NCBI GenBank assembly: GCA_044892505.1
Contig: CM097882.1
Span: forward strand, 309,194,001-309,258,000
DNA length: 64,000 nucleotides
Direction of reading: 5' to 3'
Source: Schmidtea nova
Taxonomy: Eukaryota
Shown piece after piece: positions 4,401 through 62,357 of this stretch (position 1 is its first letter; every line of letters starts with the position of its first letter). Below the pieces are notes generated by a model. The model saw nothing but the letters and a program-made list of their open reading frames with translations. It searched no databases and was not told the origin of the DNA. The position numbers and the translations under genes are program-made.

Positions 4401-4847
4401 AAGGATTTTAAATTCATTTCTTGTGCGCTTTCTACATGCTTTATTAACGCTTTATTTAGACAAATTTCAGTTTTTGTCCAACACTAGTAAATATACGCTG
4501 AAAGTTACTCAGATTTTTGAAGGAAAAAGGGTTGTATGTGTTAGACAGTACGAGGTTATGTATTAGAAAGTTATGCGTTGATAAATTAATAAGACTTTTT
4601 AAAGATAAAGTAATAATAAGCATAAGACTTTCCATCGGCAGTAAGAACCCGAAAAAGAGAATGCAATGAGGAGTACTTTTGGCAACAAAGCTCACCTAAT
4701 CATTGAATTCTCGCACCACCATGTACATTACCAACATATTTACAAGAGTTACTATTTCTACACGAGTGAGAAAATTTATCATTTTAAATAAGGTGTGGGT
4801 TACGGTAGTCGATCAACAATAAATTTTTAACAAACCATACACCAACA
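1171..4847 (+). mobile_element. Unit H1, divergent member of the TG...CA family; left boundary uncertain
   Basis: The right end ACCATACACCAACA (4847) matches the end of copy E (CCATACACCAGCA, 46228). The minus strand of about 4620-4740 aligns with the family terminal motif (GGTGAGC...TACTCCNCATT...CGGGTTC...CTGCCG). About 2750-4300 is an inverted homolog of 15300-16850. Confidence 0.5.
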
Positions 4848-5549: not shown

Positions 5550-6829
5550 GTCAAATTTTGTTTTCTAATTTTATATTCAAACATTGTTTTGAAAATATCT
5601 TTTTAACATTATGTGCTCAATGCGTCATGGGACGTGTTACCATAAACGCAAATTTCTGTAGCACGGATTTTATAAAATTATTTTATTTTTGCAATCAAAT
5701 GTTAAATTTATAATTGCTTATTTAAAAAAGTAAAATTTTCATTAAATCAAAATGGAATTTCAATAAAAAATGAATGTTTCTCAATTGTTTATATATGATA
5801 TTCTAAGATTTTTAATACGAATGAATTATTTTATATTCAAACTCTTATAAACTGAAAGTGTTTATTTCTTAGCTATCACACTGTATATTATACTTACATA
5901 AAATTTCTCTTACACAAAATTTTTGTTTTGTATTATAGGTAACTAGATGTTATTTTTCTATTTAATAAAAAGTGTTATTTTCTTAATTTAAAAAACTATC
6001 CATATTGTTGGTTGTGCGTGGTGATTTATTTAAATCTGCAGATGATCTGACCATCACTTATCTAGGGTCACGACAAAATACATAAAAAGCTTTTTGCCCG
6101 AATGCCCGTAAATACCCTTGATACTGCATATGTCAGACGAATGTGAATCAGCAAGTGAGCGTCTGTGTTACAACAATAAACCAACGAATTTAAATAATAA
6201 ACTGTATTTATACGAAAGAAAAGAAAACACTACTCACGGTGAATAATAACAAATGCCTTCTTATTTCAATTCGATTTTTTTTTGAAATTTTTCTTTTTTC
6301 TAGTACACTTAATTTTTTGTTAATCTCCAATTAAAATCTTGGTTTTTTGAATTTATATTTTGCTGGGTTCATGGAGGGGTTAGATGAAAAATGCTCTAAC
6401 AATGACTAGGGATCCCTCATCCATGATCATGCATAAAATTGCAATTCTACACTCAAGCGCCCTTGACTACTTCCCTATATAATCAAGTTGGTGATGCGCA
6501 GGGTGGTTAAACAATGATGGGCAGGTGAGCACTATTACTAGTACTACTCCCCATTTATGTTTACGGGTTCATTGCTGCCGTTAGAAGGACTTACGCTCAA
6601 ATCATCCGCTTAGGTATTCCGCAATAATCTTTTAGAAAATTTATCTTCAACATCGCTTATTCTGCATGACGTATTTCAACAAAATGCTCGCTTAATTATT
6701 CATTTGCCTTTATTAGGTATTTTGTGAGATGAGTTTATAGTTTTATTCTACAGTTATCTAATTATTTGTCAAGTTAATTAAATCACTTTAAATGAACAAT
6801 AACAATTTTAAGATAACACGAAAATTTAT

Positions 6830-7426
6830 TCAATCTTTAATTAGTTCAGTGAAAACTCCAGCTGGGGGAAAGATTTCCGTTAATAATTCCCCTTCGGTCA
6901 TTTGATGCAGGCCATCTACTTGGCTCTGTAATCGTTGGGCAAATAGTTTCCTTTGCCTTCGCCGTTTCTGCCCAATGCGCTTGCGTTTCTGGTGCGCATT
7001 TGCAGTTGAGGTGGATGGATTTGTTGCCGGAACCGGCTCGTTTTGGCTTCCGATTAGATCAGCGACGTCCGTGCCAATCGAGTTGACGATCTTCTTTTCC
7101 GATGTCCATTCCTGATATGTAACGGGACGGATTTGATCTCTAAGTTCTTTCTCAATATAGGAGGCAGTTACAGAATGGAGGCATTTTCGAAGCTCTATTT
7201 TAGTAGCCTCCCATTCCATTTTATAATCTGCTGCAGTTTGCTGGGCACGTTCGGTTTTACTGATTTGCTCCTTCATCCTAGCCGGAGCAAACCAGCTTTT
7301 GCGTAAATATGTGACCTGCGCCTCGGCTTTGACTAATTGCGCTTTGAGGAGACCCAATTCCTTGTCCTGGGCTCTCCGGATCCGCCACATCTTTTCTAAC
7401 TCCCTTTGTGCCAGATCGGTATTCAT
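6830..7426 (-). CDS. Family ORF B, 198 aa: coiled-coil-like N-half and Arg/Lys-rich C-terminal patch; unknown function
   Basis: Intact ORF. Motifs WFAPARM, TKIELRKCL, QIRPVTY and KRKRIGQKRRRQ recur in copies C, D, E, F, G and the 36 kb fragment. Confidence 0.8.
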   Translation of the reverse strand: MNTDLAQRELEKMWRIRRAQDKELGLLKAQLVKAEAQVTYLRKSWFAPARMKEQISKTERAQQTAADYKMEWEATKIELRKCLHSVTASYIEKELRDQIRPVTYQEWTSEKKIVNSIGTDVADLIGSQNEPVPATNPSTSTANAHQKRKRIGQKRRRQRKLFAQRLQSQVDGLHQMTEGELLTEIFPPAGVFTELIKD

Positions 7427-7620: not shown

Positions 7621-8100
7621 TTATCGCCGAAATAGGCTGTGCATCTCGTTGTTTATCGGCATCTGACGAAGGCGAGCCCAAGAGAATGAAGGTTGCCCTT
7701 TCCGGCATTCCTTGCCGAATGGTTTCCGCGGCAAAAACTCGTGCAGGCCCAATTGACACAATTCTCGGCGAGGGATATGTCCCCAATAAATTATACGGCT
7801 CGCTCGTCCTGCTGCGTCCTTTATTACCACGATCATTTGGCCAAACTTGTTTGAGTAAGGCCTTTGGGAAATTGGCCAGTTCGGTCCTCCACGATAGAGT
7901 ACTTGGTCACTTCCTCCTGTCCATATCGAAAACGGGCATTTTCGACCAAACCCATGTCTCCACTTGAACATTTGAGCGTTGAGGGTCCGCAATATCGGTG
8001 CCGGTAACTCCTTGAGTTGGGAGACCGTTTCATTGTCTGTATTCCATCGTTCCCAATTCCGCATTTGAGTCAATTGGTTCATAATCTCGGCTGTCGGCAT
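7621..8100 (-). CDS. Family ORF A, 159 aa; unknown function
   Basis: Intact ORF. Motifs LKxLP, KWR, KCPF, YRGGxxW and IYWxHIP recur in diverged copies. Confidence 0.8.
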   Translation of the reverse strand: MPTAEIMNQLTQMRNWERWNTDNETVSQLKELPAPILRTLNAQMFKWRHGFGRKCPFSIWTGGSDQVLYRGGPNWPISQRPYSNKFGQMIVVIKDAAGRASRIIYWGHIPRRELCQLGLHEFLPRKPFGKECRKGQPSFSWARLRQMPINNEMHSLFRR

Positions 8101-9258
8101 CTATATTACTTTATTGAATATAAACCATAGGATTTAACGGAGGAAATTTGTTGGACAATTTATTGATACCGCGTATAATCACAAAATTTAATTTAAAATA
8201 AGATTAATTTTATTTATCTTCGCCGTGATCTACCACGGTCGGAATAAAAAGTTCATAATTAGTCCTGTGCTATATACAGCATTCAGGAATTATAAAATTT
8301 ACTTTCAGAAAATGATTTTCCGCGCTATATACAGCGATCGGACTAGCTATTAGATAATTCCGCGTCATGTGCGACGATCGGTTTATTTTTAAATATTTTC
8401 AACTTGGTTTAGATTCCCCACTGCATTCCACCGCGATCGGAATTTATTTATCGGATGATCGTGACTGTGATGTGATTTTGTCTGTATTATCTAAATCAAT
8501 CTTATCGAGTCGTACTTTGACCCGTAATGAAATTCGAAATTCGATCGATTTGAATACCATTTTTCTAATTTAGATCGTCTCGCATATGCTCCAGAATCTC
8601 AAATTTTCACCCTTTAAGCTTAGTACTTGGGAGGCTAATACCTGACTTTCCTTCGGTGCTGCATACCTTCTGGTAGCTCTTTCCGCCTTTCCTACTGTGC
8701 CCCACGCTATGCCCTCTGTGCAACCGACTATGCGATATTTTAATTTTAGTTCGAAATTCGTCGAAAAATTTTACAATGCATTATGAAAATCTTTATCAAA
8801 TAACTAAGCATGAATCGAAAACCATTAGTACTAAATTAGCATCTTTACCCGTTCTCGAATTATGTTCACAAAATTAAAAATTACAAGAATAAAAAGGTTG
8901 AACCGCCATGTGAGACCGTGAGGCCCCACAACGACGACTCGGACTCCCTTGCCGCGTGAGCAGCCTAGGAAGTATAACTATATACATAGTTAAATTAAAA
9001 TATTAAAATAAAGTAAATTTAAAATATAAAATTATAATTGAAGAAAATCATGGATACATTAACATCATAAAATAAAACAAAAATAAAATATTACGTTCCG
9101 TACTTGAATGTATTATTGAATGTTTCCTCGGATTTGAAGTACCTCTGGTTCTCGAAAAATCGTTCGGTTAAATTTTAGTAATAAAAATAGTTCTTAGAAT
9201 CAAAGTTTAGTCTTGATTGTAAGTTTTGATAACAGTTGAGTTATGATTTTTGGATCGG

Positions 9259-9293
9259 TATTTATACTGATCCGTCTGGTTGGATTGACCAAT
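9259..9293 (-). promoter_or_regulatory. CCAAT box plus TATA box of copy A, pointing toward ORF A and ORF B
   Basis: TATAAATA on the minus strand at 9259-9266 and CCAAT at 9289-9293. The same 21-22 nt gap is seen in D (39571-39604), F (63769-63803) and G (30594-30625). Confidence 0.6.
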
Positions 9294-10249
9294 CAGGATC
9301 AGACCGTCCATCAAAGTATTTTTATTATTTTATTCTAACCTAAACATTATTTTGTTTCCTTTTCCGGTTTCTCGCTGGGTGATCCTGATTTTTCGAGTAA
9401 TTAATTAATTATTTGCACTATTATTTTATTTAATTCTATCTTTTCTTATTTCAGGCCCCCTTTTGTTGTTGTTTACCGGTTTATTTTCGAAAATTCCTTT
9501 TACTGAAAATTTATCAAATATTATTTGTCATTTGATTCTTGTTTTTAATTTGTTTTTATTGTTATTTTTATTTTTATTATTTCTTTATTATTTCATGTTT
9601 TCGCTCTTTTATTGTGTTTTTAGGTGATTTGGCGGGCCCAACAATTTTATAGTTTCTTTCAAATCTTTTTAAATTTCAAATTTTCTACCGTAATTTTCTG
9701 ATCCAATTTAATTTAATTTTTGTTTTCTTTTTAACCTTGTTTTGAAATTGGTTGAATGATAATAATGATAATTTTCAATTTTCTTTAATTTAGATTTTAA
9801 ATTTATAATTATTCTAAATTTTGTGATTAAAATTCCTATAGTAATTAGTTTACTATAGGAATTTATTTTGAATTTCTATCGCACGGCGATTAACCAAACT
9901 AAAAATAATAATAACAATAATAAAAAAATGAAGGGGGGGGGGCTAACCATTCATAACAAAGATATTTAATGCCGAGTGTTAACATAGTGACAATAAGAAA
10001 TTCCTGTTTGATAATTAAGACAACGGGTCTGATCACTTCGCTAAATTTATATCTCGTGGATTCACACTGTTTAGTAATTAGAAAATTATTCCTCCCCATT
10101 CTTCAGTGTCACTGATCATTATCTAATTCTCATACACTTTATAGACAGTTAAATGATATTAATTTTTTTAAACAATAAGAGCTGAGATGAAAACACATTA
10201 AATGAACAAAACTATAATTGTTGAACTACTACACTATGAGATGCACACA

Positions 10250-12255: not shown

Positions 12256-12269
12256 GAACTTGGGACATT

Positions 12270-14454: not shown

Positions 14455-15299
14455 GACTAGACCAATATATAATTAATAATAGAACAATATAAACAAAATA
14501 AGTCACTTGGTTACTGATGGGTATTATATCTTATTTTAGTCCTTCGTTCTTTTGCATAATCTTAATTTGTCCACTAAGTACCCGCTTCTAAGTTACGTTG
14601 GAACTGTAACTCAATTTGTGGATGTCTGTAAAAATTGAGCTCCTTTGCCGAAACTGTAATTTTCTTGACTTACAATAGGTAAAACACTATCGTTAGAAGT
14701 TCTGTTGGAGTAGTGGGAGAGTCACCTCCTAGCTTCTATTGTTACTATTTTTCAAATCAGCTCTCTCAATCGTATTAACTCCGATCGTTTCCACTTCTTA
14801 AGTTAAGTTGGTAAAGTGGGTCAGTAGTCAATGACCTGCTTCAGTAGTGAGCTCGTCTCGAATTTTGCATCTGTAGTCACCATTTAATTTACTATATCGT
14901 TAGAAAAAATGTGCGCGTCGTGAGTTGCTTTCTATTATGTAATCTCAACCTTACCATAAATAATATTGTTAAGTTCGTATAGTGGGTTACAAAATAACAC
15001 AGATGTTGGACTCAATACAATGTTGTGTTTATAATATTTATTTACCGATAAATAAATAACTCAAAATGACTTAAAAGGCTTTATTGAATATATTTTGCTC
15101 ATATCCGTTGCTAAGACTGCTGGAACTATTGCTGCTAATTTGACTACTATGCTAGCTGTAAATATATAAATTTCATTCGTAGAATGCTTACATTTTGTAT
15201 TGGATTTACTATTTATTTTACTATTAATTACTGATTTGCTCCACGAGTTGGAACTGCGACTCATGGGTGGTTGACATTTTCGCCTTGAGCCTCCTTCAT

Positions 15300-18479: not shown

Positions 18480-20311
18480 AAAGAGGCATGAGACAAGATT
18501 AAATTACTTACGAAGGAAAAAGCTGGATTTCCCTGTCGATCCTAAAATAGAAGAAAACAAAAATCAATAATTTTATTATAATAATTTAACTTGGTATATT
18601 ATAAATCAACCAATTAAAAGTGGTAAATCTTGAACTTACGTATATATATTTCTTCCTTTACGGCGCTGGTAGTCGTTGATATTGGCCCAAAAATGCTTGA
18701 GGTTAAATTTTCTAATTTACAATTTCGTCTGAAATCTGAAATTAATATAAAAATTCATATTCATAGCTAAATTCATAAGGTTAAATTAATATAACCTTAG
18801 AAAAATCTACACCGTTGCCGTTACTAAGGCATCGGCGAAATTTCAAATATTATAATTATCGGATTTTTGATAAAAATGGAATTAAAATTATAAAGCAAGA
18901 TAGACATTAGGTATAGGGGATAAGAGAATTTTAGTTAAAATTTACTGAGACAAAAATATATAAATTTAAAAGTCTAGAAAATAATAAAGTTTGGTTAAAA
19001 TCGTCAAAAAATCAAATACCCCGAATATATGTGATGATCAAAGATTTTTCGATCCTCGAATTGAGTTGGCGATGGTATACTTGATTATAAGCTTAAAAAT
19101 AAAAAATGAATGAGCGAAAACTTCTGTGTTTCGAGACATGACTGTGTATAATAGACGGTTGTGAAAATAATCAATAAATTTCTATCGGTAAAATTATTTC
19201 ATCTTACTGATTTAAAATGAATATCTATAATTAAATTATGATGCTAAATAATGGCTTAAATGTGTTTTGAATGTGTGATTTTAGATTTTAGATTTCAGAA
19301 ATGAATCTCGAAGAAAAATTTGAGGAGATGCATCGGTTGATTTTGGAAAATGCCCGACATAATCGCCGGGTAGATCAGTGCTTTGCCGAGCTGGAAAAGG
19401 CGAAAACATCAGATTCCGACGCTTTGCAAATTATGACCTCCTGGATGGAGAAATGTCGAGCGCGGTGCAGATATATGGAGTCGACCTGGTCCGACAAGGA
19501 GACCGTCGACAAACTGAAGAAGCAGAACCAGATGCTTCTACAACAGGCTGTGGAAGACGCAATGAGATTGCGCGCATGCCGTGTCACGATGCGAGAGCAG
19601 GAGCTCTTGATCGAAAAATTGAGGGTGGATAGCGGCATTATCACTGCCATCTTGCCGAAATCATCGTTTCCACCCCAAGAATTGTTTCCAGTGAGGGTAG
19701 AAAAAGAGATCCTAACCCCTCCGGTTCCAGTGAAGTTTACGCGGCAGAAACCCAACAAAGGAGTGAGGGCTCGACTAAGACGTCGTCAGGAAGCGCGATT
19801 GCTGGGGCAAATACGCAGAGTCATCAGAAGTGATAGACATAACACTATTGTGATTTCTTGAATTGAACAAATAATATTTTCATCTTGTGAATAATGTTAT
19901 ATTTATTACCTTACTTTGTAGTTTATGTTATTGTTTTTGTTGACATTAAAGTTTTTGTGTTTGAAATATTTATTTGTTTGAATGCGTGAAGGGAATAAAT
20001 TGAATAGAATCAACTGAGGTTCAGTAGTAAATTTTAACTCGATATAACTTATGATTTTTTTTAAATAATGCATAGGAGGGACAAAATGGGCATTAAACCT
20101 TCTATCGGTAGCCCTTGGACCCAGGAGATATTCGGTCAATCATAGTTTCGTATTGACGACGCTCACTGATTGCGAATTCCCACCAATTTGTTGTATTACC
20201 AACGTTACATTGTGACGGGCAACAAGATGGTTATTTCAAAGTTTTGTATGTTGAGTTGTTGATACGAGCCATAGCAACGTCAAGGTCATATTGACGATCA
20301 ACAACCCACCA
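18480..20311 (+). mobile_element. Copy B1, divergent subfamily of the TG...CA family; 5' end not located
   Basis: The 3' end is CAACAACCCACCA (20311), with the family terminal motif in reverse orientation at 20100-20170. It shares upstream and downstream blocks with 42950-44231. Confidence 0.6.
19301..19861 (+). CDS. Divergent ORF B-like protein, 186 aa, intact
   Basis: Helical N-half with YMESTWS (compare YLRKSWF) and a basic patch KPNKGVRARLRRRQ. It occupies the ORF B position just before the terminal motif. Confidence 0.6.
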   Translation: MNLEEKFEEMHRLILENARHNRRVDQCFAELEKAKTSDSDALQIMTSWMEKCRARCRYMESTWSDKETVDKLKKQNQMLLQQAVEDAMRLRACRVTMREQELLIEKLRVDSGIITAILPKSSFPPQELFPVRVEKEILTPPVPVKFTRQKPNKGVRARLRRRQEARLLGQIRRVIRSDRHNTIVIS

Positions 20312-20780
20312 ATCGGACTATTGCGTCTATAGCTACATCCACTCTTGGCATCTTCGATAGAAGACGAGGCAATTTTGGGTTTCCTTTGACTTTATAAATA
20401 CGTGCTGGGTTCATAGAAGGGTTGAGAAAATAATACGTTATGGTACTAGGGAAACCCTATCCATATTCATACATAAATATATACTATTTCATTCGAGCGC
20501 CCCTAACTACTCCCTGTATAGTTATGTTGGAAATGCGCAAGGTGATTGGAAAATGATGGGCAAATGAGCTCCATTTCTGGAACTACTCCCCATTTATTTT
20601 AACGGGTTCCCGCTGCCGTTAGGAGGTTTTACGCTATTTATTTTCTTCAATAATTACGCTTGGTTCTCTTAAATAGATAAACACTATTTTTCAAATGTGA
20701 TTTAATTTACTTATAAATTTCTTAAACAAACAAAACGACAACAAAAACAAAATGACAATGTACGACATAAACAATTTGTT

Positions 20781-21375
20781 TTATTTTACAAAAAATTCGG
20801 GAAAATCTCCGTCGAGCGGAAGGATCTCGGTCAACAAATCCATTTCCGTTAACTCTACCATTTGATCAATTTGCGCCTGTAATTGTTGGTCAAATAACTT
20901 CTTTTGTCTCCGGCGCTTGGAGCTGATTCGTTTTCTTTTCTTAGTGCAGTTGGGGATCGATACTACTTTGATGGCGCTGGTGTTACCACTATGACCGGCT
21001 CTAAACCCTTGACGTCTGTTCCTACGGAACACTTGGGTTTCTTCTCCTTCACCAGTTTTGGTAGGTAATGAGCCGGATTTGGGTTCTGAGTTTAGAGTCG
21101 ATGAATGAGGTTGTTATCGAGTGGAGGCACTTTCGTAGTTCAATTTTGGTGGCCTCCTACTCGACCCGGTATTCATCTGTTGTCCGTTGAGCCCGTTCTG
21201 TGTGAGCCATCTGATCTTTCATTCTCGATGGTGCAAACCAGCTCTTTCGCAAGTATTGTATCTACGCTTCAGCCTTAGACAATTGGGCCTTTGTTTGCCC
21301 GATCTATTTTTCTAAACTCCGTCTGATTCTCCAAGCTTTATCCAGTGCGATCTGGTGATTGGATTCTTGGTTCAT
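20781..21375 (-). pseudogene. Copy C ORF B, with stops and frameshifts
   Basis: WFAPSRMK, EATKIELRKCLHS and KRKRISSKRRRQKKLF are recognisable. TAG occurs where copy A has Gln and Trp. Confidence 0.8.
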
Positions 21376-21548
21376 ACTATATAAAAGAAAATGTATTCTG
21401 ATAAATTGGATAGCTACTGTAGTTTCTATTATATGTTAGAGAAAATGTATTTTACCTTAAATAAATACGACTCAAATAACAGGACAAAATTTAAATTAGA
21501 ACAACAATTTATTTGATTTAATTCTATCACACAATTAACACTATAAAT

Positions 21549-22050
21549 TCATCTACCCTTCCCGAATACATGAGCGACGTGGAGGCCTTGGTTTATAGAG
21601 ACTCGTCGAATCTCTGCCAAAGAGCAATCGGACAAACTCTTCTCATGCCCTTTCCCGAGAGGACGTGGAGATGTGAAGAGGTTGAGTCCCAAACCGGCGA
21701 GTTCGCCCTGAGGGATATGCTCCCAATAAATCTTCTTCTGATCTGGACCATTTATAATAATTATCAAGCGTCCGAACTTCGGAGAATTGCAGTTGTTGGC
21801 CGCGATTGGCCATCCAGGACCTCCTCGGTATAGTATCCGGTCCCTGTCGGTTTTACAAGTGAAAAATGGGCATTTCCCCCCATTTTTCCTTCCACTTGAT
21901 CATCTGCGCATTGATTGTCCTCATGATCGGGGGTGGCAGGCCTTTTAACTGCCGATTGGCTCTTGTTATTGAATTGTAGACGGGCTTTGATAACCCTCTC
22001 TGTGATTTCACAAATTTTTCTACGGATGTTAGCTCCATCTGTTTTAACAT
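21549..22050 (-). pseudogene. Copy C ORF A, one frameshift in a G6 run near 21878
   Basis: Removing one G restores KWKEKWGKCPFF...ILYRGGPGWP...KKIYWEHIP. Confidence 0.8.
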
Positions 22051-25000
22051 ATGAAATATTGGTAGACTGATTAATATAAATTCCTTTCAAAATCTATGTC
22101 AAAATCGAAATTATTGCTCCAATTTAGAAAATGAGAAAATTATTATTGTTACGTGTGACGCAAACAAAAATTGGTTTGGCTAAATTAGTTGGGATAAAAC
22201 CGCATTATACTATTGGTTCTGTATTTAATTAAGAAGAAAGAAAAAAATCTGATAGACATTTGTCGAACACTGTCGCTTTGTACAGCGATCAGAACTATTT
22301 AAATTATTATTTATCATTAACCTGCGCTATCTACAGCGATCAGGACTATAAAAATAAATTCAAATAATATCTGTCGCTATATACAGCGATTAGATTTAAT
22401 AATACTGTCCCATGCGATTTTATTATGTGAATAGACCAAGACGAGATAAGGCGTGTAAGTAAATTTTTATCTGTGTGCGTGGATCAACTAATTCGCATTG
22501 TCCATATCCGAACTATCCATGGAATGCAATCTTATCAGCTATGTGAAATTGATCAAAATGTAAATCGAGGGTTTATTTGACTATTGTTAAAATTTATTGG
22601 TGTTTTTAACCGGTCAGTACAAACTATCCCTGTGCGTTATTAATTCAAAGTTTGTTACTTGAACAAGATGTTTTACAAACCAATGTCCTTAAGCGCAATA
22701 CGAATTCCCAAAAAACGGTGCCTACCCCTATGTATCTGTGTAATACAAATCCAATTTTTGTTTAAATAAGTACCGAAGCTGTTCCTAAGAAGTTAAGGCT
22801 ACTGATAGGTGATCCTAGTTAGAATCGTATCACTCTCTGTTTATTAAATTTATTTCAACCCTGTCCTATGTTGAAATTCAAATTTGTTTACCCAGTGAGG
22901 AATCCTTTCTGCTTCTAGGTGAGTCAAATTCAACTTGGTTTAATAAATGTACTACAAAAATTGTTCCTATGTGCAACCCTTAAAAAGTAACATCATAAAA
23001 GTTATAACTCACTCACCACCTAGTGGATCTAAAAAGCCCCACTAAGACGGCTTGCGTCCTCGCAGCGTTAGCTACTGAGGAAGCATATCTATTTAAATAA
23101 TAATAAATTAAAATGCATCAAATTTGAAAATAAAATCATTAACATAATTTCAACAAAATCATGGGAATATTAAAACATATAACAAATCAATTCGAAACCA
23201 CTGAACAATAAAATTAATTTACTTCTTTCAATAAATTCGGTTTTCTTGTAAAAATTCAACTATTGTCACTGAGTGCGTAAAAACGGTTTAATCGCTTTAA
23301 GTCCCTAACGCAAAAATATTTCTCCAAATTCTGATTTTCGGGTCGGTATTTATACTGATCAGGTTGGCCAGATTGACCATTCAGGATCAGACCGCCCTTC
23401 AAAGTATGTTCATTATTTTTAATTAATTAGTACCTTATTCTCGTTCAGTTTTATATTTTCTCGGCTGGTGGTCTCAATTTTCTAAGTAATTTATTAATAA
23501 ATTGTACTTTAATTTGTTAATTTTTAGGTAAATTTTCCATTTTTCTATTTTGGATTCGTTGTTGGCCTCTTCTTCACTTATTCGGATTATTTTTATGCTA
23601 TTTATTTTTATCCTTTTCCTTAGGTTTTCTGTGTTTCAATAATATATATTTTTTTATTTTGTTTTAATTATTGTTATATTTTTTGCATTTTTAGATTTTA
23701 TGGTGGGCCCAACATACGTATTAAATAATTCGGAAATACCCACAGGGAAAATCCCGCTACTAATACAAAATTATTTTTAATAAGAAACTCTAAACAAGAC
23801 CCGAACGAAAATCACTGCTAAGAAAACATATTGAATAATTACAGCACTTCAATCATTAGTATGCGGAGCTATCTAAGAACCATGCCGAATATTCCAAAAG
23901 GAGCGAGTAACATTGCCTCGCCATTTTTCATTGTTCTTCAAAAGTCGTTAAAAGTCGTGCCCCTTCTAGCCGCTTTTTTCATATGCTCTTCTTATGGCTA
24001 AGGTTTGGTGATACGTAGATTTTGGTGTGGTTACGATGCGCAGAGGTATAAATTTCTTGGACCTATCCGGTGGACTTTGCTAGGAACTGGTTGAGGGGTC
24101 GGATTCTCATAGCTAACTCCATCTATACATACGTATCTAATTTTTTTTTCCGACTCAAGTTCTTGCCCTTCTTTTCCAAATTAAGTTAATCGATTGATTA
24201 TTTAGTGCATCATATTGGTCAATCTTTATACATGATTATAATTATGGCATGGGCTTATGTATCTGTATATTTTGTCAATGAAAGAGAAAAATTCTTCGGG
24301 TTTGCCATAAATTCTGGCAATCATGCATTGGTGAAATCATTTTTCAAAAATCTTTGAAGAAAACTAAATAAAGTAATTCAACAAGAGAAACATTATTATT
24401 ATTTCGGAAGAAGATCATTTAAAAAATCTTTCTGAGATTTATATTTAAGGTGATAAATCTATATTTTGAGGATATTTTTAAGTTTAAAGGAAATGTCGCT
24501 TTGACAATGGAAAGCTGTCATTTTCCGCTTATCATATTGAAATTTCGTCTAAATAATTTTAGCTATCCTTTTCTGTTTCGACATTTCTTTTTTATAGTGT
24601 AATTTCTTGTTCCATGCTTTCACAACATTAAAACTCGCTGTAGCGACATTAATACTCAATAATCTTTACTTTTTTTCTTCAAAGCATATTTAAATTATTA
24701 CATTGTCCATCTAAATTTGATGAATTTTGTTTTGCGAAAACAATTCCATTTGTGCTTTGTTAATTTTAGGGTACCAAATTCGATTTTGACATTTGTTTTA
24801 ACGTTTAACGTATGAATTTATTAATTAAGCCGTTTTCTTATTTTTTGGTGGACGATATCCTCTTCTCTCTGCTATTCGCTCATCATTCTCCGGTCTGATG
24901 GATCCATAGCAATCACCCTCCTTCATAACTACCATTCCGACGGAACCGTTATTATAGACTGACTGGTATCCGACAGTTGGTTCTCTATTGCAATAGAGGT

Positions 25001-36074: not shown

Positions 36075-36780
36075 AACTGGGTTTTTTGTCAAAAAACACA
36101 TTGGAAGGATCTTGGTGATCAACTCCGATTCGGTCAGGTCGTCTAGTCGGTCGACTTGATTTTTCATTTGTTGGGCAAATAAATTCTTTTGCCTACGCCT
36201 TCTTGCACCAATGCACTTGTGCGGCCCTGATGTCTTGTTCGATGCCTCCTCTGGCTTGTTTCCTCTATTTTGGTCGAATCCGACTTAATCGTTTGTATCC
36301 GTGCTCATTGAACAGAAGATCTTTAATTTGGCTTGCCGATTTTGTAACCCTTCGGTGATGGGTTTCCCTCGCAAGCCAGAGATGGAGAAACGGCCCATTT
36401 TCAGTTCCTGACATTTCCGAAGTGGTCGTGTGGAGCTACCAACTTTAACTCGAATTTTGAAACTCTGGTTGTGGAATGTGCTCCCAGTAGATCACCTGTT
36501 GGGGTCGCCCGATTTGGTATTTGATGAGAATCATCAAACATGCATATTTATTAAAGTAGCTGTTGTCCGTTGAGATCAGATAATTCATCCCTCCTCGATA
36601 TCGGATCTCCTCGAGGGGATTCTCCATTATGGTGAAGGGACACTTAGAGCGGAATTCCTGGCGCCATTTGCATATTTTTGGACGTCGATTGTATGTCGGA
36701 TCGATGACATTAGGTTTTTAAGCGACTTGATTAACCTCAGCTGCTGTACCTCGTATCTCTCCTTGGCTCAAATTCGCCAG
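36075..36780 (-). pseudogene. Internally deleted family fragment joining ORF A to the C-terminus of ORF B
   Basis: KWRQEFRSKCPFTIM...IRYRGG...VIYWEHIP, then CIGARRRRQKNLFAQQM...LTESELITKILP. Confidence 0.75.
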
Positions 36781-37546
36781 TTATTCTCATTGTCTTTCTC
36801 CAAAGTGCATTTTTTGTCCATTTTCTTATAAAATTCATTGGCATCAATACATTGTTGATCATTAACCTTGGTTATCAACGCAGTTCACCCTGCTGAAAAC
36901 TTTCATTTATGTTATTTCGTCTTACTAAAATTTATTTTCAACGATGCTCTCTGTTATAATAGTCTCATTTGTCCACGAGCCTTCCGGCCCCTCATATTAC
37001 CTCCTGGATCTCCATGATGTGCAGTCAAAACAAAATCCAAAATTTTTTACATCTCCACCTGAAAATTCTCTGTCGTGAAATCAGACTCAACTATCAAGTT
37101 TATCTCTGAAATTACCCTGGCGTAACATTGCTGGTTTGTTGGTTGATGTTTAACAAGGGATTTTGTCTGATGTTAATATTAGGGCAATTCCACCATCATA
37201 AAAATATTCTCCCTGCTGATGCCAATGACTCGCCTCTAATTGCTCATCATGTTGGTACTGCATCCAGCGTTGTAGTCTAATAGGGCAGGTGAGCAACCTT
37301 GGCGGTTACCATTTCCTTGTTAGAGCTACGGGTTCACCACTGCCGATAGAAGGCCTGTGTGGATTTATTTCGGTCCCAATTTTATACCTTCACTATATTT
37401 ATTTACTACGACTCACATTCTTTATTCCTCCGGTTCTCGTCATATATTTTATTTAATTTTCTTATATTACATCGTTCCTTATTTATGCAGACTATCCAAC
37501 ATTCATTTCATCATACAGGAAGACAAGTCATGTTCAATACATATAT

Positions 37547-38111
37547 TCAACCTAATAACACCGTGGTATTGATGACGTTCACTAGCTGCTTCTCCGATAA
37601 GCCGCTTAGCAGATCTACCTCTATTCTTAGCCTTTCCGCGTAGGCCCTCATTTCCCTACGACGCTTAGCTCCCAATCAATTTCTCTTTTTCGTCCTGGAT
37701 GACAATGCGTCTACTCTCGGCGGTAGCGGTATCACTCTTTCATTGAGTGACGTGAGAACTTCCTGGGTTTGCGTCTCCATACTCCTATGAGTAGGAGTCA
37801 TCCAGCGATCAAACGTGCTTGCCCTGATTAGCGGTTTTAATTGTTGTTCGATGAACTCTTTTGTAGTCGCCCTCAGGCAACGATTTAATTCCAATCGGAC
37901 AGCGGCTGTCTCCCGAGCCTGCTCCTCCAGCGCTCTCTCGGCGTTGTTGAATCTCTTTCACCTTCTCGGGGCTGAACCAGGCCCTTTTCATTGAATCGAT
38001 CTCTACGTTTTGTCGATTTATGTAGTGTTCCAATAATCAGATGCGCATTTGCAGTCGTCGGCGTATACGCTTTTCGTCAACCGGTCCATCTATAATTTGA
38101 ATGAGGGTCAT
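37547..38111 (-). pseudogene. Copy D ORF B, with stops and a frameshift
   Basis: AWFSPEKV, RLELNRCLRATTKEFIEQQLKPLIR and GAKRRREMRAYAERL are recognisable. Confidence 0.75.
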
Positions 38112-38324: not shown

Positions 38325-38807
38325 CTATTTTTTCTTCGGGTTCCGCCTGGCCAGAAGTATTCGAGGTTTTTTTTTTTTTTTTTTTATGCCCCATGGCGGA
38401 TTAGGGTAATGCCGTGGTTCTCCTGTGACGACATCCCGCGGTTGATCCAGTAAGACGAATCCCATCTGTTGTAAAGTACGACCCGGAATGGGTATGAACG
38501 ACAATATCCATCGGGGGACATTTCTCTGATCATCGAATTGAACGAACCATTTCCGCATATAGATACGCGTAGAAGAGTCTCGTAGTGGCCAGGATGAGTC
38601 TCCCTCCCAGCGAATTCTAACCACGTATTGGTCCGGATTCAGATTTACCGTGGAGCCCGTATGCTCCCGTTTCCAATACCGTAAACAATGATTGGCTTTG
38701 GTTTGGATGATATTTGGGACTGGTGAGATTCCTTGTGATTCCTGGAAATTTGATTTCACCGTTCTACGACGACGATTTTTCCTAGATATTGGTAGTCCCT
38801 CGTTCAT
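38325..38807 (-). CDS. Copy D ORF A, 160 aa, with a poly-A run near the C-terminus
   Basis: RIRWEGDSSWP...FVQFDDQRNVPRWILSFIPIPGRTLQQMGF aligns with copy A VLYRGGPNWP...IVVIKDAAGRASRIIYWGHIPRRELCQLGL. Confidence 0.7.
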   Translation of the reverse strand: MNEGLPISRKNRRRRTVKSNFQESQGISPVPNIIQTKANHCLRYWKREHTGSTVNLNPDQYVVRIRWEGDSSWPLRDSSTRIYMRKWFVQFDDQRNVPRWILSFIPIPGRTLQQMGFVLLDQPRDVVTGEPRHYPNPPWGIKKKKKKPRILLARRNPKKK

Positions 38808-42949: not shown

Positions 42950-44231
42950 ATTCTCTTGAAGACAAGACAAATTATTCGCTAATTTCTTAGTTTTTCCCTG
43001 CTATGCCGTGACTCTCAGGAATAGACAAATCTTAAATGAAAAAAAAGAAATGGATCAGTTATGTAAATAAGACGATAAAACTTATCAAATCAGAAAAATC
43101 CAACCGGGAAGAAATCTTGTACAATAAATAAAAGTGATAAATCAATAAATATGAGAATATCTACAATAGTGCAATTAGCCAATCAGATTGTTTGATAGAC
43201 TTATTCCAGAACTTTGATTTAAAGTATTTGTGAGAAATTTTTATATAGAGCATTTAACACAATCATAGTAAAGGGTGTTAATGAAGATCTTTGAACTTCG
43301 TAAATTAATTTCTAGATAACTTTCATAATATTTTTTAACCTAAAATAAAATGCCGTTGCTAAGGTGTCGGTGGAAATTTTAAAGTTGAATTTCTGACAAA
43401 AGTTTTTTATAATTTATAGGACAAAAGAGACAATAGAATTAGGATATAAATAAAGCCTAATTAAATTTTTAACATTAAAAAACAGAAATTTGAAAGATCA
43501 CGAAAATAATAGTTATTTAGTCCAAAATAACAGGCATTGAATATCCCCTAACATATGCATTTTTAAAGGAATATCTGATCTACGAATTGAGTTGTGATAA
43601 TATATTTGAGCATGAGCTTGAGACTAAAATAAATGTGCGAAAATGTTTTTGTCTTGAGAAAGTATAGTGGTTGGATGGAGTAATTGATTTTATTATGCTT
43701 TAGATTTTCATTGGAAAAATTGAGGGAAAATTTATTTGAAAGCGCTGCTGATCACTTTAATCGATACCCGATTTGGATTTAAGATTAGAAAATCAAAAGC
43801 AGGAACACTAGCTAGAACTCTTAACCCTCTTCAAAATGATTGAACTGATTCTGTTTTGTATGTGGCTGGGATACATTTGCTTAGACCATTATTCTTGAAT
43901 GATGCAGTTTAATTTGATGTTAATAAATGTGGATGCTTATTCTGAATCGCCGATTAAAATCCTATTGATTGCTTATATATTAATCGTTGAATAAAAGAAT
44001 CAAACAGGCATTAGACCTTCTACCGGTAGCCATTGAACCCATTGTGACGTTCGGTCAATCATAGTTTCGATTTTTTCGACGCTCACTGTTTGCGGGCATC
44101 CACCCATTTGTTTCGTTACCAACGTTACATTGTGAAGAGCAACAAGATGGTTAAGCTAATGTTTTATGTGTTGAGTTGTTGATAGGAGGCACTGCAACTT
44201 CAAGGTCATATTCACGGTCAACAACCCAGCA
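42950..44231 (+). mobile_element. Copy B2, B1-like with no recognisable ORF
   Basis: 44015-44231 is closely similar to 20095-20311 and ends CAACAACCCAGCA. 43350-43660 is similar to 18805-19140. Confidence 0.65.
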
Positions 44232-44399: not shown

Positions 44400-44770
44400 C
44401 TCTTACTCGTGGGCCTCAAACCGTTCCCCGAATCGGTTAGCCGAGAACTAAATAGCCATATGTGGAAATGGCGCAGGGAATTCAAACGCCTAGTCCCTTT
44501 CGGCCCATGGAAGTCACAATAGGCGGAGGAAATCTGGTGGGAAGGATGTCCCATCTGGCCACATTCACGTTCAATTCTCGACGATCCAGGAGCCACCCAA
44601 AATCGGTTCATTTTGTTCTGGGATCAGAATCAGTTACCACGTTAGATGATGAGTTTTCGAGAGATTCCAATCTCCAAATTGAACGCACTCAAAATTATCC
44701 TCTTGTACACTCCTTGAAACGTCCGCACCGGTGAGAGACTACAATTCAAAAACCTCTTTCCGGTTTGATG
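44400..44770 (+). pseudogene. Copy E ORF A, in-frame stops only
   Basis: LKPFPESVSRELNSHMWKWRREFKRLVPFGPW...IWWEGCPIWP...RFILFWDQNQLPR*MMSFREIP. Confidence 0.8.
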
Positions 44771-45302
44771 AAACATGGCGGCAGGAATCCACATGGAGCT
44801 CTAGCATACAGATTTGTGAGATATTTGCCTACCAATCCCTCTTGTGTTGGAGGCATGATCCAAAGGTCTACTCAATTGAAGGAATTCGACTGCAGTCGGG
44901 TGACAACATCCAAAATTTTATCACGGAAGGATAATCTCGCTAACGACAGTTTTTTTATTGTTGTTTGGGCAAATTAATAGTGTATTAGCATTAGTTTCGT
45001 TTGTGCTATTGATATTTTATTTTATTACTACGTAATGATGAGTTTGATTGAGAGAGAAAATAGCTCGATTATATAAGTTCCGTTCACGAACTGTACTAGT
45101 ACTTGAGAATACAGATTTAGGGTACGATTGGTACTAATGAAAAACATAGCGTAGAACTCGAATTTTTCAGTGATAAAATAGAAGGTCCCGTTGTTTCACG
45201 TAGTCAAAGTCAACAGCTAAGCCCGAGGGTAAAAAAATCATAAAAGTACAGAACCCAGCGTAGACATATTTCTCTGAGGTAAATGATAGGAATTTTCTTT
45301 TA

Positions 45303-45875
45303 ATGAGTAAAGAAACAAAAGAAATAAATAAAGCCCATCAGGTGATCCGTAAGCTAAAGAATGAGAATCAATCGTTAAAAAGAAAAATCGCACAACAGAC
45401 TCGTATAAATAAAGAAATGCATCAAATTTGGTTCACGTTGTCCAGCATGAAAATGGTAATGTGAAGAATTGACAAATTGAATCAGGCATTGAGCGATCAA
45501 ACAACCGAATTATCAGCTACCAAGCTCGAGATAAACCGTTGTCTCAGTTCCACCACCACAGATTTTGTATCACGGCATCTACAAGACCAAATACGGCCCA
45601 TCACCTTGGAGAAATGGGTAGCACAACTGCCCTCTACAAAGGCAACTTAGACGGATTCCTCTACAGCAGTCGAAATTGCAACGTTAACGCCAGCGCTCGC
45701 AAAATATCCGTCGCCTACCGGAATTCAGAAGTAAAAGCACAAGAACAGGATGGTAGCAAAGAGTAGACGTGAACACCGAGCTTTCGCAGAGAAATTAGGC
45801 ACTCAAGTTGACCTACTGTGTGGGTTGAATGAAAATCAATTGATCGAACTGATAAATCCGACTGTGTTCATATAA
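45303..45875 (+). pseudogene. Copy E ORF B, 190 codons with three in-frame stops
   Basis: ATKLEINRCLSSTTTDFVSRHLQDQIRPITLEKW...VAKSRREHRAFAEKL. Confidence 0.82.
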
Positions 45876-46275
45876 ATAAATGTATTATTTGTAAATGTAT
45901 TATTTGTAATTGAGTTTTGTGTTTGATTTTAATTAACTATTAAGTATGAATCAGAGTGGTTTTGTTTGTTAATGCTGTTCAATTTAAATTATATAAAGGG
46001 ACAAGGTGTACGCCAGATAAAGGTCTTCTTCCGACCAGTGAACCCAGTATGTGAAAGAGGGAATAGTAATCATCTCGATTGCTCAACTGCCCTCTTGACA
46101 TACACCGGTTGATGTAGTACCAACGTGAGATATAGCTAGGGGCATCATTGTGGGGGATATATTTTTTATGTTGGTGGAGTTTACCCTAGTGTAAGACCAA
46201 ATAAACTCATCTCCACCATACACCAGCATTCCTTATTTTTGGATCCTCGCTTATAAAATAGTGTATGTAGCGTTA

Positions 46276-61107: not shown

Positions 61108-61583
61108 TGCTGGGTTCATGGATGGTGTAGTAAACATTCAAATGATTGCCAGGGATCTCCCATCCATGATCATGCATAAATAGTCGTAAGCTACACTCGA
61201 GCGCCCTTGATTATTTCCCTTGATAACCAAGTTGGTGATGCGCAGGGTGGTTAAACAATGAGGGGCAGGTGAGCACTATTGCTAGGACTACTCCCCCTTT
61301 ATGTTTACGGGTTCACGCGGCCGTAGAAGGACTTACGCAATTATTGTTCTATTGTGTGTGTGTGTGATGTTATGTATTTATCATAACAAAAAAAAACAAG
61401 CAAGCAAAACGAAACTACGAATTTGATAATATTTAAATTCTTTATCGCTACTCCTTTCGTTGTGTGACGGGTAATTTAATTATATGAATTAGGTAATCGA
61501 AGGAAATACTTAGGAAATAACAACAACAACAAAAACGAACAAAGATTTAATTAACTCCAAAATCTGACATCATATTCTATCTG

Positions 61584-62174
61584 CTACAGAAATTCTTTGA
61601 AAATTCCTTCAGGAGGGAATATCTCTGATAACCACTCGGCTTCCGACATTTCTGCCATAGTGGTTACTTGTGCTTGCAGCTGCTGAGAGAACAGCTTTCT
61701 TTGGCGACGGCGCTTGGAACCGATTCGCTTTCGCTTGTTCGTTTTCCCGACGGGGTTTGGCGTAATGGCGGCTTTCACCCGGCTCTGCACTGTGGTTGCT
61801 TCGAGCCCATCGGTATCTGTACTGACCGAGCAGGCCACTTTCTGTTCTCCTACCCATTTCTGGTAGGTGATGGGTCGGATTTGTGCTTTCAATTCGGACT
61901 CGATAAATGAAGTCGTCACCGAATGGAGACATCGGCGCAACTCAATTTTTGTTGCTTCCCATTCGGTGCGATAATCGTCAGCTGTCTTTTAAGCCCTTTC
62001 CGTCCGACTCATCTGCTCCTTCATACGGGCTGGGGCGAACCAGCTGGTCCGTAAATACTGAATCTGAGCTTCTGCCTTGGCTCGTAATGCTTTTTCCTGA
62101 TTTAGCTCTTTTTCTAAGGCTCGGCGGATCCTCCACGCCTTGTCCAATTCTCGCTGTTGGCTAGTTTCCGTCAT
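61584..62174 (-). pseudogene. Copy F ORF B, one frameshift near 61990
   Basis: QRELDKAWRIRR...WFAPARMKEQ, then LRRCLHSVTTSFIESELKAQIRPITYQKW...KRKRIGSKRRRQRKLF. Confidence 0.82.
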
Positions 62175-62357
62175 ACTAAATAACAAACCCATTTTATGAT
62201 GCAGCAATTATGTTACCAACGATTAATATTATCCGTCGAGTGTAAAAATTATAGGATTAAATAAATAGAAATACATTTAACTAAGAACAAGCAAAACACA
62301 GATCAACACCATTTAATTTATAGAAACATTTAGTTCATAGTAATGTGAATAGAATTT

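What the first reader, a model, noticed from the sequence alone, without database searches (positions are those of the whole stretch)
6361..6600. Covarying terminal RNA structure that appears to fold on the strand opposite the ORFs
Seen: helices are kept by compensatory changes. CATGGAGGG/CCCTC-A-TCCATG in A compares with CATGGATGG/CCATCCATG in F. CTTGA/TCAAG in A compares with TAACTA/TAGTTA in C. A GCGC/GCGC helix has loop CCCT complementary to a downstream AGGG, suggesting a pseudoknot. GGCAG-GTGAGC/GTTCAY-CTGCC recurs in A, D and F, with related forms in C, H1, B1, B2 and E. The GTGAGC/GTTCA helix has a conserved G-U pair that works only on the strand antisense to ORF A and ORF B. Inference: a functional antisense RNA element, such as a packaging or replication signal or an unclassified ribozyme.
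Basis: partly seen in the sequence, partly recalled or inferred. Interest (0 to 1): 0.8.

Follow-up and report, generated by a model that had tools for sequence, protein, structure and literature searches.

The report
Structured 3' RNA module of repeats
The flagged 240 bases are the conserved, non-coding, folded 3' end of a repeated 2-3 kb element that encodes two orphan proteins; the folding is real and kept by compensatory changes, but it most likely forms on the same strand as the ORFs, not the opposite one.

Summary
Window 6361-6594 is one of eight full copies, plus two decayed ones, of a ~230-nt module. In five lineages it forms the exact 3' end of a 2-3 kb unit with two orphan ORFs. It also occurs alone (E, H).

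The covariation is real. On a structure-guided alignment of eight copies, 88% of cells pair against 67% in shuffles, and 27 of 42 pairs change on both sides (0/500 shuffles). A sequence-only alignment agrees. Synonymous sites between copies A and F are saturated, yet their modules are 84-85% identical. Every frame holds stops, so selection acts on the nucleic acid.

The long GGCAG-GTGAGC/GTTCA-CTGCC helix consists of near-invariant letters with no double change. It also overlaps covarying helices, one of which holds an invariant U.G on the ORF strand. Wobble counts, RNAalifold energies, z-scores and loop composition all lean modestly to the ORF-sense strand.

Rfam, ribozyme-core, tRNA, protein and fold searches found nothing.

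Best reading: a cis-acting 3' RNA module of an RT-less mobile element, copied by a reverse transcriptase supplied in trans. An R2-clade RT lies in the window, interrupted by copy F. The function is inferred, not shown.

The parts
6361..6594 (-). Copy A of the ~230-nt 3'-terminal module (the finding). On the minus (ORF-sense) strand it folds into helices P1, P2a, P2b, P2d, P3a, P3b and P4, followed by a 9-10 nt single-stranded tail ending ...CCAGCA at 6361.
   Evidence: CM match of 280.7 bits. Stops occur in all six frames.
6563..6581 (-). P1: a 4-bp hairpin (6578-6581 with 6563-6566). Its loop and 3' arm carry the near-invariant GAACCC.
   Evidence: helix 1: 81% of cells paired, 1 pair with a double change. 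This is weak support.
6509..6562 (-). P2 domain. P2a is 6558-6562 with 6509-6513. P2b is 6550-6554 with 6517-6521. P2d is the hairpin 6539-6545 with 6528-6534 and holds the invariant U.G (6543 with 6530). The invariant GCUCA follows.
   Evidence: In P2a, P2b and P2d, 5, 4 and 4 pairs respectively change on both sides. U.G is present in 6 of the 6 copies aligned in that hairpin.
6457..6499 (-). P3 domain.
   Evidence: helices 5 and 6: 94% and 90% of cells paired; 3 of 4 and 4 of 8 pairs change on both sides. Copy A has two U.G pairs on the ORF-sense strand.
6370..6425 (-). Its large loop carries the conserved CCCUAG.
   Evidence: helices 7 and 8: 4 of 6 and 2 of 3 pairs change on both sides. 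In copy C the two changes give G.U on the sense strand and A.C on the antisense strand (read by hand).
6595..6829 (-). Spacer between the ORF D stop and the module. It cannot be aligned between copies.
   Evidence: No BLAST similarity among copies here. It serves as an internal neutral control.
6830..7426 (-). ORF D of copy A (198 aa, intact). It is predicted to be long helices with a basic patch near the C-terminus. It is an orphan.
   Evidence: pN is 0.18-0.30 against saturated pS.
7621..8100 (-). ORF U of copy A (159 aa, intact). It is an orphan.
8101..9230 (-). AT-rich leader of copy A, poorly conserved among A, C and F.
9231..9470 (-). Conserved 5' block, found in A, C and F only. On the ORF strand it reads an inverted CCAAT box followed by TATAAATA, inside nested inverted repeats. 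It looks like a promoter.
   Evidence: A and F are 82-83% identical here.
20403..20632 (-). Module of copy C.
   Evidence: 252.8 bits.
20781..21387 (-). ORF D of copy C, broken: at least 1 frameshift and 3 stops.
21552..22038 (-). ORF U of copy C, broken: at least 1 frameshift.
23309..23563 (-). 5' block of copy C.
61108..61336 (-). Module of copy F. Its 3' end abuts, and cuts short, an R2-clade RT ORF on the other strand.
61584..62207 (-). ORF D of copy F, broken: 1 in-frame stop.
62358..62858 (-). ORF U of copy F (166 aa, intact).
63739..63976 (-). 5' block of copy F. The window ends soon after it.
37129..37359 (-). Module of copy B2. It lies about 320 nt upstream of the ORFs of B1, head to tail.
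37571..38069 (-). ORF D of copy B2, broken: at least 1 stop, with pieces in more than one frame.
38325..38807 (-). ORF U of copy B2 (160 aa, intact).
36102..36735 (-). Copy B1: partial ORF U and ORF D with 1 stop each. No module was found 3' of them.
46018..46228 (+). Module of copy D. This unit is on the plus strand.
   Evidence: 39.4 bits.
44412..45872 (+). ORF U and ORF D of copy D, each broken by 3 stops.
44010..44231 (+). Solo module H. It lies directly upstream of copy D, head to tail.
20092..20311 (+). Solo module E. It is 82% identical to H, and the homology starts and stops at the module bounds. It lies tail to tail with C, about 90 nt away.
4622..4847 (+). Module G, with no recognisable ORF U or ORF D upstream.
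6042..6179 (-). Decayed partial module about 180 nt downstream of A's 3' end, in the same orientation.
   Evidence: nhmmer E=0.17. An AGCAAGTGAGC variant was found. This is weak.
14591..14703 (-). Decayed 5' half of a module.
   Evidence: nhmmer E=0.018.

Best explanation
Window 6361-6594 is the 3'-terminal, non-coding ~230-nt module of a repeated, unclassified mobile unit of 2-3 kb. On the ORF strand each unit reads: a 5' block with promoter-like motifs (A, C and F only), a leader, ORF U (~160 aa), ORF D (~200 aa, helical with a basic patch), an unconserved spacer of 145-250 nt, then the module ending exactly at ...CCAGCA.

The module is read as RNA on the ORF-sense transcript. It folds into four domains (P1; P2a/b/d; P3a/b; P4) with invariant single-stranded motifs: GAACCC, GCUCA, ACCAAC and CCCUAG.

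I infer that it is the cis signal by which the transcript is recognised and copied from its 3' end by a reverse transcriptase supplied in trans. This would work as R2-type and other 'stringent' non-LTR elements recognise their structured 3' UTRs. The unit's own basic coiled-coil protein may also help to bind it. The module-only copies E and H would then be minimal riders on the same signal.

Shown: the copies, their exact shared 3' end, covariation, constraint far above neutral, and absence of coding. Leaning only: the sense strand. Inferred: RNA-level function, reverse transcription and the partner enzyme.
For: Structure.
- Eight full copies were found.
- 88.3% of cells pair against 67.4% in shuffles, and 27 of 42 pairs change on both sides (0/500 shuffles). 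Slid controls give 34-47% paired.
- An alignment not fitted to the structure gives the same result, and RNAalifold recovers the helices by itself.

Constraint.
- pS between A and F or C is saturated (0.87-1.05) while pN is 0.18-0.39.
- The A and F modules are 84-85% identical, and the adjacent spacer cannot be aligned.
- All six frames hold stops in every copy.

Position and strand.
- Every module that has ORFs next to it lies 3' of ORF D on the ORF strand.
- There are 25 G.U against 11 A.C cells on the sense strand, and 10 against 2 in A, C and F.
- An invariant U.G sits inside covarying hairpin P2d.
- RNAalifold gives -14.4 against -6.9, -26.2 against -20.4 and -44.4 against -39.6 kcal/mol, sense against antisense, for 8, 6 and 3 copies.
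- z-scores are lower in sense for all six copies tested.
- Unpaired letters are A-rich and G-poor in sense.

Mobility.
- The 3' end is identical to the base in all lineages.
- Units are dispersed in both orientations.
- F cuts an R2-clade RT ORF short of roughly its last 300 residues.
- Solo modules E and H share exact bounds but have unrelated flanks.
- There are head-to-tail pairs H>D, B2>B1 and A>decayed module.
- Units hold no polymerase, integrase or transposase domain.

Precedent.
- R2 needs its 3' end for protein binding and for the start of target-primed reverse transcription, and it has internally deleted non-autonomous derivatives (PMC3414825, abstract shown).
Against: - No reverse transcriptase carrying this module was found. 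The one RT in the window is in the opposite orientation and has lost its own 3' end.
- There is no poly(A) or simple-repeat tail, and I saw no target-site duplication at E, H or A (read by hand).
- The conserved 5' block looks like an upstream promoter. A simple RNA copy that starts downstream of the TATA-like motif would not carry it, so either transcription starts further upstream or copying is not RNA-based.
- E and H share the same 5' bound, which fits a discrete short element better than random 5' truncation.
- The strand preference is modest (14 against 6 pair columns) and partly circular, because the helices were first read on copy A's sense strand.
- Only eight sequences from about four lineages were available, the distant ones aligned with the help of the model.
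- There are no expression data.
Confidence: 0.48

Rival explanations
1. One reading: the structure forms on the strand opposite the ORFs, as an antisense RNA that serves as a packaging or replication signal or as an unclassified ribozyme.
For: GAGC/GTTC complementarity with a G.U in 8 of 8 copies on that strand. Watson-Crick covariation is symmetric between strands, so most helices could also form in antisense (83.3% of cells paired, derived). There are 11 A.C cells on the sense strand that would be G.U in antisense.
Against: The G.U helix has no double change and pairs no better than shuffles. It overlaps the covarying helices P2b and P2d, and also P1. P2d would carry an invariant C.A in antisense. 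Energies, z-scores and loop composition favour sense. There is no Rfam ribozyme hit and no hammerhead core. The promoter-like block and the ORFs point to sense transcription.
Confidence: 0.1
2. A host multigene family rather than a mobile element. The module would be a conserved 3'-UTR element for mRNA stability, localisation, translation control or non-canonical 3'-end formation. The solo copies would be gene relics or separate non-coding RNA genes.
For: The proteins are under purifying selection. The upstream block is conserved and promoter-like. No transposition enzyme, terminal repeats, target duplications or poly(A) tail were found. The copies are clustered within 64 kb.
Against: The ends are exact to the base in very divergent copies. 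Copies lie in both orientations among other transposons. F interrupts an RT ORF. Only A is intact in both ORFs and four copies carry stops or frameshifts. E and H are discrete module-only units with unrelated flanks. No homologue of either protein was found in billions of proteins, although the neighbouring GGTase-like gene has hits at 80-88% identity.
Confidence: 0.15
3. The fold acts at the DNA level. One strand would form a single-stranded DNA end recognised by a strand-specific transposase or rolling-circle enzyme, as in IS200/IS605 or Helitron ends.
For: It is a terminal, strand-biased structure with an exact end. There are no terminal inverted repeats, no target duplication and no poly(A).
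Against: A 230-nt multi-domain fold with many G.U pairs and conserved loops is far larger than known DNA end hairpins. No such enzyme lies in or near the units. The ends do not read as Helitron ends. No matching structure was found at the other end.
Confidence: 0.07
4. The module is first of all an independent small RNA gene or SINE-like element of ~226 nt. It was captured at the 3' end of the ORF-bearing units, or they derive their tail from it.
For: E and H are discrete units of exactly module length. G has no ORFs upstream. The module is the most conserved part of the family.
Against: There is no tRNA, 7SL, 5S or snRNA relationship. A/C/F form the closest group for both the modules and the ORFs, which fits co-inheritance rather than repeated capture.
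Confidence: 0.1

Closest known systems
R2 non-LTR retrotransposon 3' UTR and its internally deleted non-autonomous derivatives (SIDEs)
   Same: Both are structured, non-polyadenylated 3' ends of a few hundred nt with an exact 3' junction. The R2 3' end is needed in cis for protein binding and for the start of target-primed reverse transcription, and short derivatives ride on it (PMC3414825, abstract). An R2-clade RT is present in this window.
   Different: No Rfam family, of retrotransposon UTRs or any other kind, matches. The units encode no RT or endonuclease. No 5' ribozyme was found. No rDNA target is evident. The R2-like copy here is cut by copy F and does not carry the module.
LINE/SINE pairs that share a stem-loop 3' tail ('stringent' recognition, for example eel UnaL2/UnaSINE1; from my own knowledge, not checked here)
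   Same: Long and short elements share a conserved 3' end, the conservation is at the level of RNA structure, and the shorter partners depend on an RT in trans.
   Different: Those tails are short (tens of nt) and end in simple repeats, and the SINEs have a Pol III head. Here the whole 230-nt module is shared, with no repeat tail and no tRNA-like head.
Drosophila HeT-A (a Gag-only telomeric non-LTR element; from my own knowledge)
   Same: It is protein-coding but lacks an RT, has a long conserved 3' non-coding region, forms head-to-tail arrays and depends on a partner's RT.
   Different: No gag or zinc-knuckle domain was detected. There are no telomere repeats in the window. HeT-A ends in oligo(A).
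omega-RNA of TnpB/Fanzor transposons (from my own knowledge)
   Same: It is a structured non-coding RNA of 100-250 nt on the sense strand at the exact 3' end of a transposon.
   Different: It requires a RuvC nuclease ORF of 400 aa or more directly upstream. The ORFs here are 160 and 200 aa and have no such domain.

Membership tests
Any Rfam 15 family (ribozymes, retroelement UTR elements, SINE-source RNAs) | A covariance-model match at the gathering score, or at least a weak match | tested here: not met
   There were 0 matches in the window at gathering score. At E<=10 on copies A and H only two snoRNA chance hits appeared, at 13 bits against thresholds of 45-48.
Hammerhead ribozyme | Conserved CUGANGA core | tested here: not met
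   The core is absent from both strands of all eight copies. No Rfam hit.
Self-cleaving ribozyme of an unknown class | Site-specific self-cleavage | not testable with these tools
   Sequence gives no sign of it. Only biochemical description of the RNA could tell.
Non-LTR retrotransposon (autonomous LINE) | Encodes a reverse transcriptase and an endonuclease | tested here: not met
   Pfam finds no domain in ORF U or ORF D. There are no relatives by word, profile, PDB or fold searches.
Non-LTR-type retrocopy (mobilised by target-primed reverse transcription) | Exact common 3' end with variable 5' extent | tested here: inconclusive
   The 3' end is identical in all copies. Unit lengths range from 0.23 to 3.1 kb. 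However, E and H share one 5' bound, which suggests a discrete short unit.
Non-LTR-type retrocopy (mobilised by target-primed reverse transcription) | Poly(A) or simple-repeat tail and target-site duplication | tested here: not met
   The flanks of A, C, F, D, B2, E, H and G were read. There is no tail and no duplication of 4 nt or more at E or H. R2-type elements also lack poly(A).
SINE | Head derived from tRNA, 7SL or 5S with a Pol III promoter | tested here: not met
   ARAGORN found 0 genes. There are no Rfam hits.
LTR retrotransposon or solo LTR | The same repeat at both ends of the unit | tested here: not met
   The covariance model finds no second module at the 5' ends of A, C or F. The 5' block is unrelated to the module.
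TIR DNA transposon | Terminal inverted repeats | tested here: not met
   No inverted copy of the terminal 12-mer lies near the other end. The covariance model finds no inverted module there.
Helitron | 5'-TC and CTRR-3' ends with a short 3' hairpin | tested here: not met
   The ends read ...CCAGCA-3' and a G-rich 5' end on the ORF strand. No Rep/helicase domain was found.
tRNA-like 3' structure | Cloverleaf or acceptor mimic recognised by tRNA tools | tested here: not met
   ARAGORN found none. An ACCA motif sits in an internal loop, not at an acceptor end.

The most novel reading that the evidence does not exclude
The module is a previously undescribed class of structured RNA. It would define a new family of protein-coding but RT-less retroelements in a (probably flatworm) genome, working like HeT-A as a parasite of an R2-type reverse transcriptase. 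The 230-nt fold alone would suffice to be copied, which would explain the module-only units E and H.
Probability: 0.25. Interest if true: 0.7.

Novelty: new variant of a known kind. Interest (0 to 1): 0.55.

Why it matters
If the reading holds, this is a clean natural example of a large RNA fold selected for longer than it takes synonymous sites to saturate. It serves as the 'address label' of a mobile element that carries its own orphan proteins but borrows its polymerase.

It would add a new RNA family, absent from Rfam, and a new element type to the poorly charted repeat content of AT-rich invertebrate genomes. It would also give a compact model for how reverse transcriptases choose templates by structure.

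If instead it is a host 3'-UTR element, it is still an unusually large, covarying regulatory RNA with no known relatives.

The practical lesson for the scan is that Watson-Crick covariation does not tell the strand. A single invariant G.U in an invariant helix is weak evidence.

Tried and rejected
External copies.
- An exact-pattern scan of viral contigs found nothing.
- The same scan of metagenome contigs gave 11 hits, all in high-GC bacterial contigs with no profile match, so they are chance hits.
- Protein-based scans of viral contigs found nothing.

Protein identity.
- Pfam, PDB sequences and word searches found nothing.
- The profile search of 1.84 billion representatives returned three bacterial BNR/SprB repeat proteins, which I judge to be noise.
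- The AlphaFold model of ORF U was too poor to search (pLDDT 50).
- The ORF D model is long helices with no fold match at E<0.3.

Exact look-ups of window proteins: none is on record.

Alternative classes rejected: LTR, TIR, Helitron, tRNA-like structure, SINE and hammerhead (see the membership tests).

Other attempts.
I used nhmmer instead.
- A duplex-fold test of a loop-junction pairing was void because my two regions overlapped. By hand, (C/U)UAGGG upstream of P4 can pair with CCCUAG in the P4 loop in C, D, B2 and G, with a mismatch in A and F. This is suggestive only, and it competes with P3.
- The leaders upstream of ORF U do not align between lineages.
- Single-sequence thermodynamic stability is not significant on either strand (|z|<1.7). 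The case rests on comparison of copies, not on energy.
Full report
WHAT IS THERE

The window is AT-rich (about 30% GC), repeat-laden eukaryotic DNA. It holds:
- a hAT transposase (31865-34364);
- an LTR-type gag fragment;
- Maverick/Polinton-type polymerase B fragments;
- an R2-clade reverse transcriptase.

A GGTase-I beta-like ORF has unnamed hits at 88% and 80% identity. Its best named hit is a flatworm at 52%. The host is therefore a metazoan, perhaps a flatworm. This is not proven.

The flagged 6361-6600 is the low-coordinate end of a ~3.1 kb repeat: A 6361-~9470, C 20403-~23563, F 61108 to beyond 63976. The repeat's two conserved ORFs lie on the minus strand. The region is thus the 3' end of the unit in ORF sense.

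THE FAMILY

A covariance model was built on A, C and F in ORF sense. It finds exactly eight full-length modules at E<0.01:
- A 6361-6594 (-)
- C 20403-20632 (-)
- F 61108-61336 (-)
- B2 37129-37359 (-)
- D 46018-46228 (+)
- G 4622-4847 (+)
- E 20092-20311 (+)
- H 44010-44231 (+)

An eight-copy nhmmer profile adds two decayed pieces, at 14591-14703 and 6042-6179.

Wherever ORF U and ORF D homologues are present (A, C, F, B2, D), the module lies 145-250 nt 3' of ORF D on the same strand. E and H are module-only units. They are 82% alike, their homology starts and stops at the module bounds, and their flanks are unrelated. All copies end in the same few letters...CC(C)AGCA or a close variant.

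- A: both ORFs intact.
- F: ORF U intact; ORF D has one stop.
- C: at least one frameshift in each ORF, plus three stops in ORF D.
- B2: ORF U intact; ORF D broken.
- B1: both ORFs partial, with one stop each and no module.
- D: three stops in each ORF.

IS THE CONSERVATION MEANINGFUL?

Between A and F or C, synonymous differences are saturated (pS 0.87-1.05) while pN is 0.18-0.39. The proteins have therefore been under purifying selection for a very long time, and neutral sites are randomised. The spacer next to the module cannot be aligned.

Yet the A and F modules are 84-85% identical. The module has stops in all six frames in every copy. Selection therefore acts on the nucleic acid itself.

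IS THE STRUCTURE REAL?

Yes.
- RNAalifold on a plain MAFFT alignment of six copies predicts the P1/P2 domain, with 12 of 26 pairs compensated.
- On that unfitted alignment, 83.9% of cells pair against 69.8% in shuffles. The covariation score is 0.400 against 0.162 (0/500). Slid controls give 37-49% paired.
- On the model-guided alignment of eight copies, 88.3% pair against 67.4%. 27 of 42 pairs change on both sides against 16.9. The score is 0.452 against 0.175 (0/500). Slid controls give 34-47% paired and 3-11 such pairs.
- RNAalifold run freely on that alignment recovers P2a, P2b, P2d, P3a, P3b and P4, with 24 of 38 pairs compensated.

Caveats:
- There are eight sequences from about four lineages.
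- The distant copies were aligned with the help of the model.
- The shuffle control ignores relatedness.
- Single-sequence folding energy is not significant on either strand.

THE LONG G.U HELIX AND THE PSEUDOKNOT

On the plus strand, GGCAG-GTGAGC can pair with GTTCA...CTGCC, with a G.U in 8 of 8 copies. But 82.1% paired equals the shuffle mean of 82.9%. No pair changes on both sides, and the changes seen in F, C, D, G, E and H break pairs rather than compensate. It is complementarity between two near-invariant blocks.

The helix overlaps P1, P2b and P2d, of which P2b and P2d carry most of the double changes (coordinates). It therefore cannot coexist with the supported fold.

The CCCT/AGGG pairing would cross the GCGC helix with no linker, and I saw no compensation for it when reading the aligned copies by eye.

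WHICH STRAND?

Watson-Crick covariation is blind to strand. Only G.U against A.C can tell.
- In the 42 supported pairs there are 25 G.U and 11 A.C cells on the ORF-sense strand. That is 14 against 6 pair columns, and 10 against 2 cells in A, C and F. Pairing is 88.3% in sense and 83.3% in antisense.
- Changes in C and F relative to A give 4 WC>GU, 3 GU>WC and 2 WC>AC.
- Hairpin P2d has four covarying pairs and a U.G in all six copies aligned there. In antisense this would be a fixed C.A.
- RNAalifold energies are better in sense for 8, 6 and 3 copies.
- z-scores are lower in sense in all six copies tested.
- Unpaired letters are A-rich and G-poor in sense.

Each indicator is modest, and the first is partly circular because I first read the helices on A's sense strand. 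The ORFs and the promoter-like 5' block also point to sense transcription.

I put about 0.7 on sense.

WHAT IT IS NOT

- No Rfam family matches at gathering score or at E<=10.
- There is no hammerhead core and no tRNA.
- There is no LTR, TIR or Helitron architecture.
- ORF U and ORF D have no relatives in Pfam, PDB, 5.8 billion proteins by word search, 1.84 billion representatives by profile search, viral contigs or fold libraries.

MOST LIKELY MECHANISM

The evidence fits a cis-acting 3' RNA signal of a non-autonomous retroelement, copied from its 3' end by an RT supplied in trans:
- an exact shared 3' end;
- units of very different length, down to the bare module;
- dispersal in both orientations among other transposons;
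- copy F cutting an R2-clade RT ORF short of roughly its last 300 residues;
- head-to-tail neighbours H>D, B2>B1 and A>decayed module;
- absence of any polymerase or integrase in the units.

R2 is the textbook case in which the 3' end is needed for protein binding and for the start of target-primed reverse transcription. It also has short non-autonomous derivatives (PMC3414825, abstract seen).

Against this reading:
- no partner RT carrying the module was seen;
- there is no tail or target duplication;
- the conserved 5' block with TATA-like and CCAAT-like motifs would not be carried by an RNA that starts downstream of it.

I give this reading about 0.45-0.5. A host gene family with a large 3'-UTR element is the main rival at about 0.15.

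- I built profile HMMs and one covariance model, for search and alignment only.
- nhmmer printed its own profile consensus line. I did not use it, and I filtered such lines out.
I stopped giving such coordinates after noticing this. This report gives only counts and outer bounds.
- The N run at 25570-25755 was left as it is.

Noticed in passing
window 59715-61130 (+), with ORFs 57426-58811 and 58893-59585 upstream: An R2-clade reverse transcriptase ORF. PDB R2 proteins match at E=1e-42, aligned to R2 residues ~365-808 of 1121. It ends inside the first bases of copy F, so roughly its last 300 residues (endonuclease part) are missing. It is the only such RT in the window.
   Followed up: partly
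window 9231-9470; also 23309-23563 and 63739-63976: A 5' block conserved at ~82% between A and F. It holds nested inverted repeats (CTGATCC/GGATCAG at 9267-9273 and 9296-9302). On the ORF strand it reads an inverted CCAAT box followed by TATAAATA. It could be a promoter or a second structured element. It is present only in the A/C/F lineage.
   Followed up: partly
window 11636-12622 (+): One uninterrupted 328-aa ORF joins a GGTase-I beta (prenyltransferase) domain to a ribonucleotide reductase large-subunit N-terminal domain. It looks like an intronless chimeric retrocopy or a mis-joined pseudogene. Its nearest proteins (88% and 80% identity) are unnamed.
   Followed up: partly
window 2551-4277 (+) and 16854-15302 (-): Another repeat family, 86-93% identical and without long ORFs. 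In both places it is followed a few hundred bases downstream, in the same orientation, by a module copy (G at 4622-4847 and the decayed piece at 14703-14591). It may be a further, decayed lineage of the same element.
   Followed up: partly
window 44010-46228, 36102-37359 and 6042-6594: There are three head-to-tail neighbourhoods: H then D, B2 then B1, and A then a decayed module. There is one tail-to-tail pair, E and C, 90 nt apart. This is more clustering than random insertion would suggest and hints at insertion next to existing copies.
   Followed up: no
window 31865-34364 (+): A hAT-type transposase: DUF4371 in a 617-aa ORF, followed by the hAT C-terminal dimerisation domain in the next ORF.
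   Followed up: no
window 53494-55657 (-): Two ORFs with protein-primed type-B DNA polymerase matches (DNA_pol_B_2), as in Maverick/Polinton elements. They are fragmentary.
   Followed up: no
window 49162-49825: A retrotransposon gag domain in a 205-aa ORF, with a 203-aa ORF fully overlapping it on the other strand.
   Followed up: no
window 46486-46925 and 51374-51838: Two tandem arrays. The first has period 15/60 and about 29 units, directly beside copy D's module end. The second has period 46 and 10 units at 90% identity.
   Followed up: no
window 25570-25755: A run of 186 N. It was left untouched.
   Followed up: no
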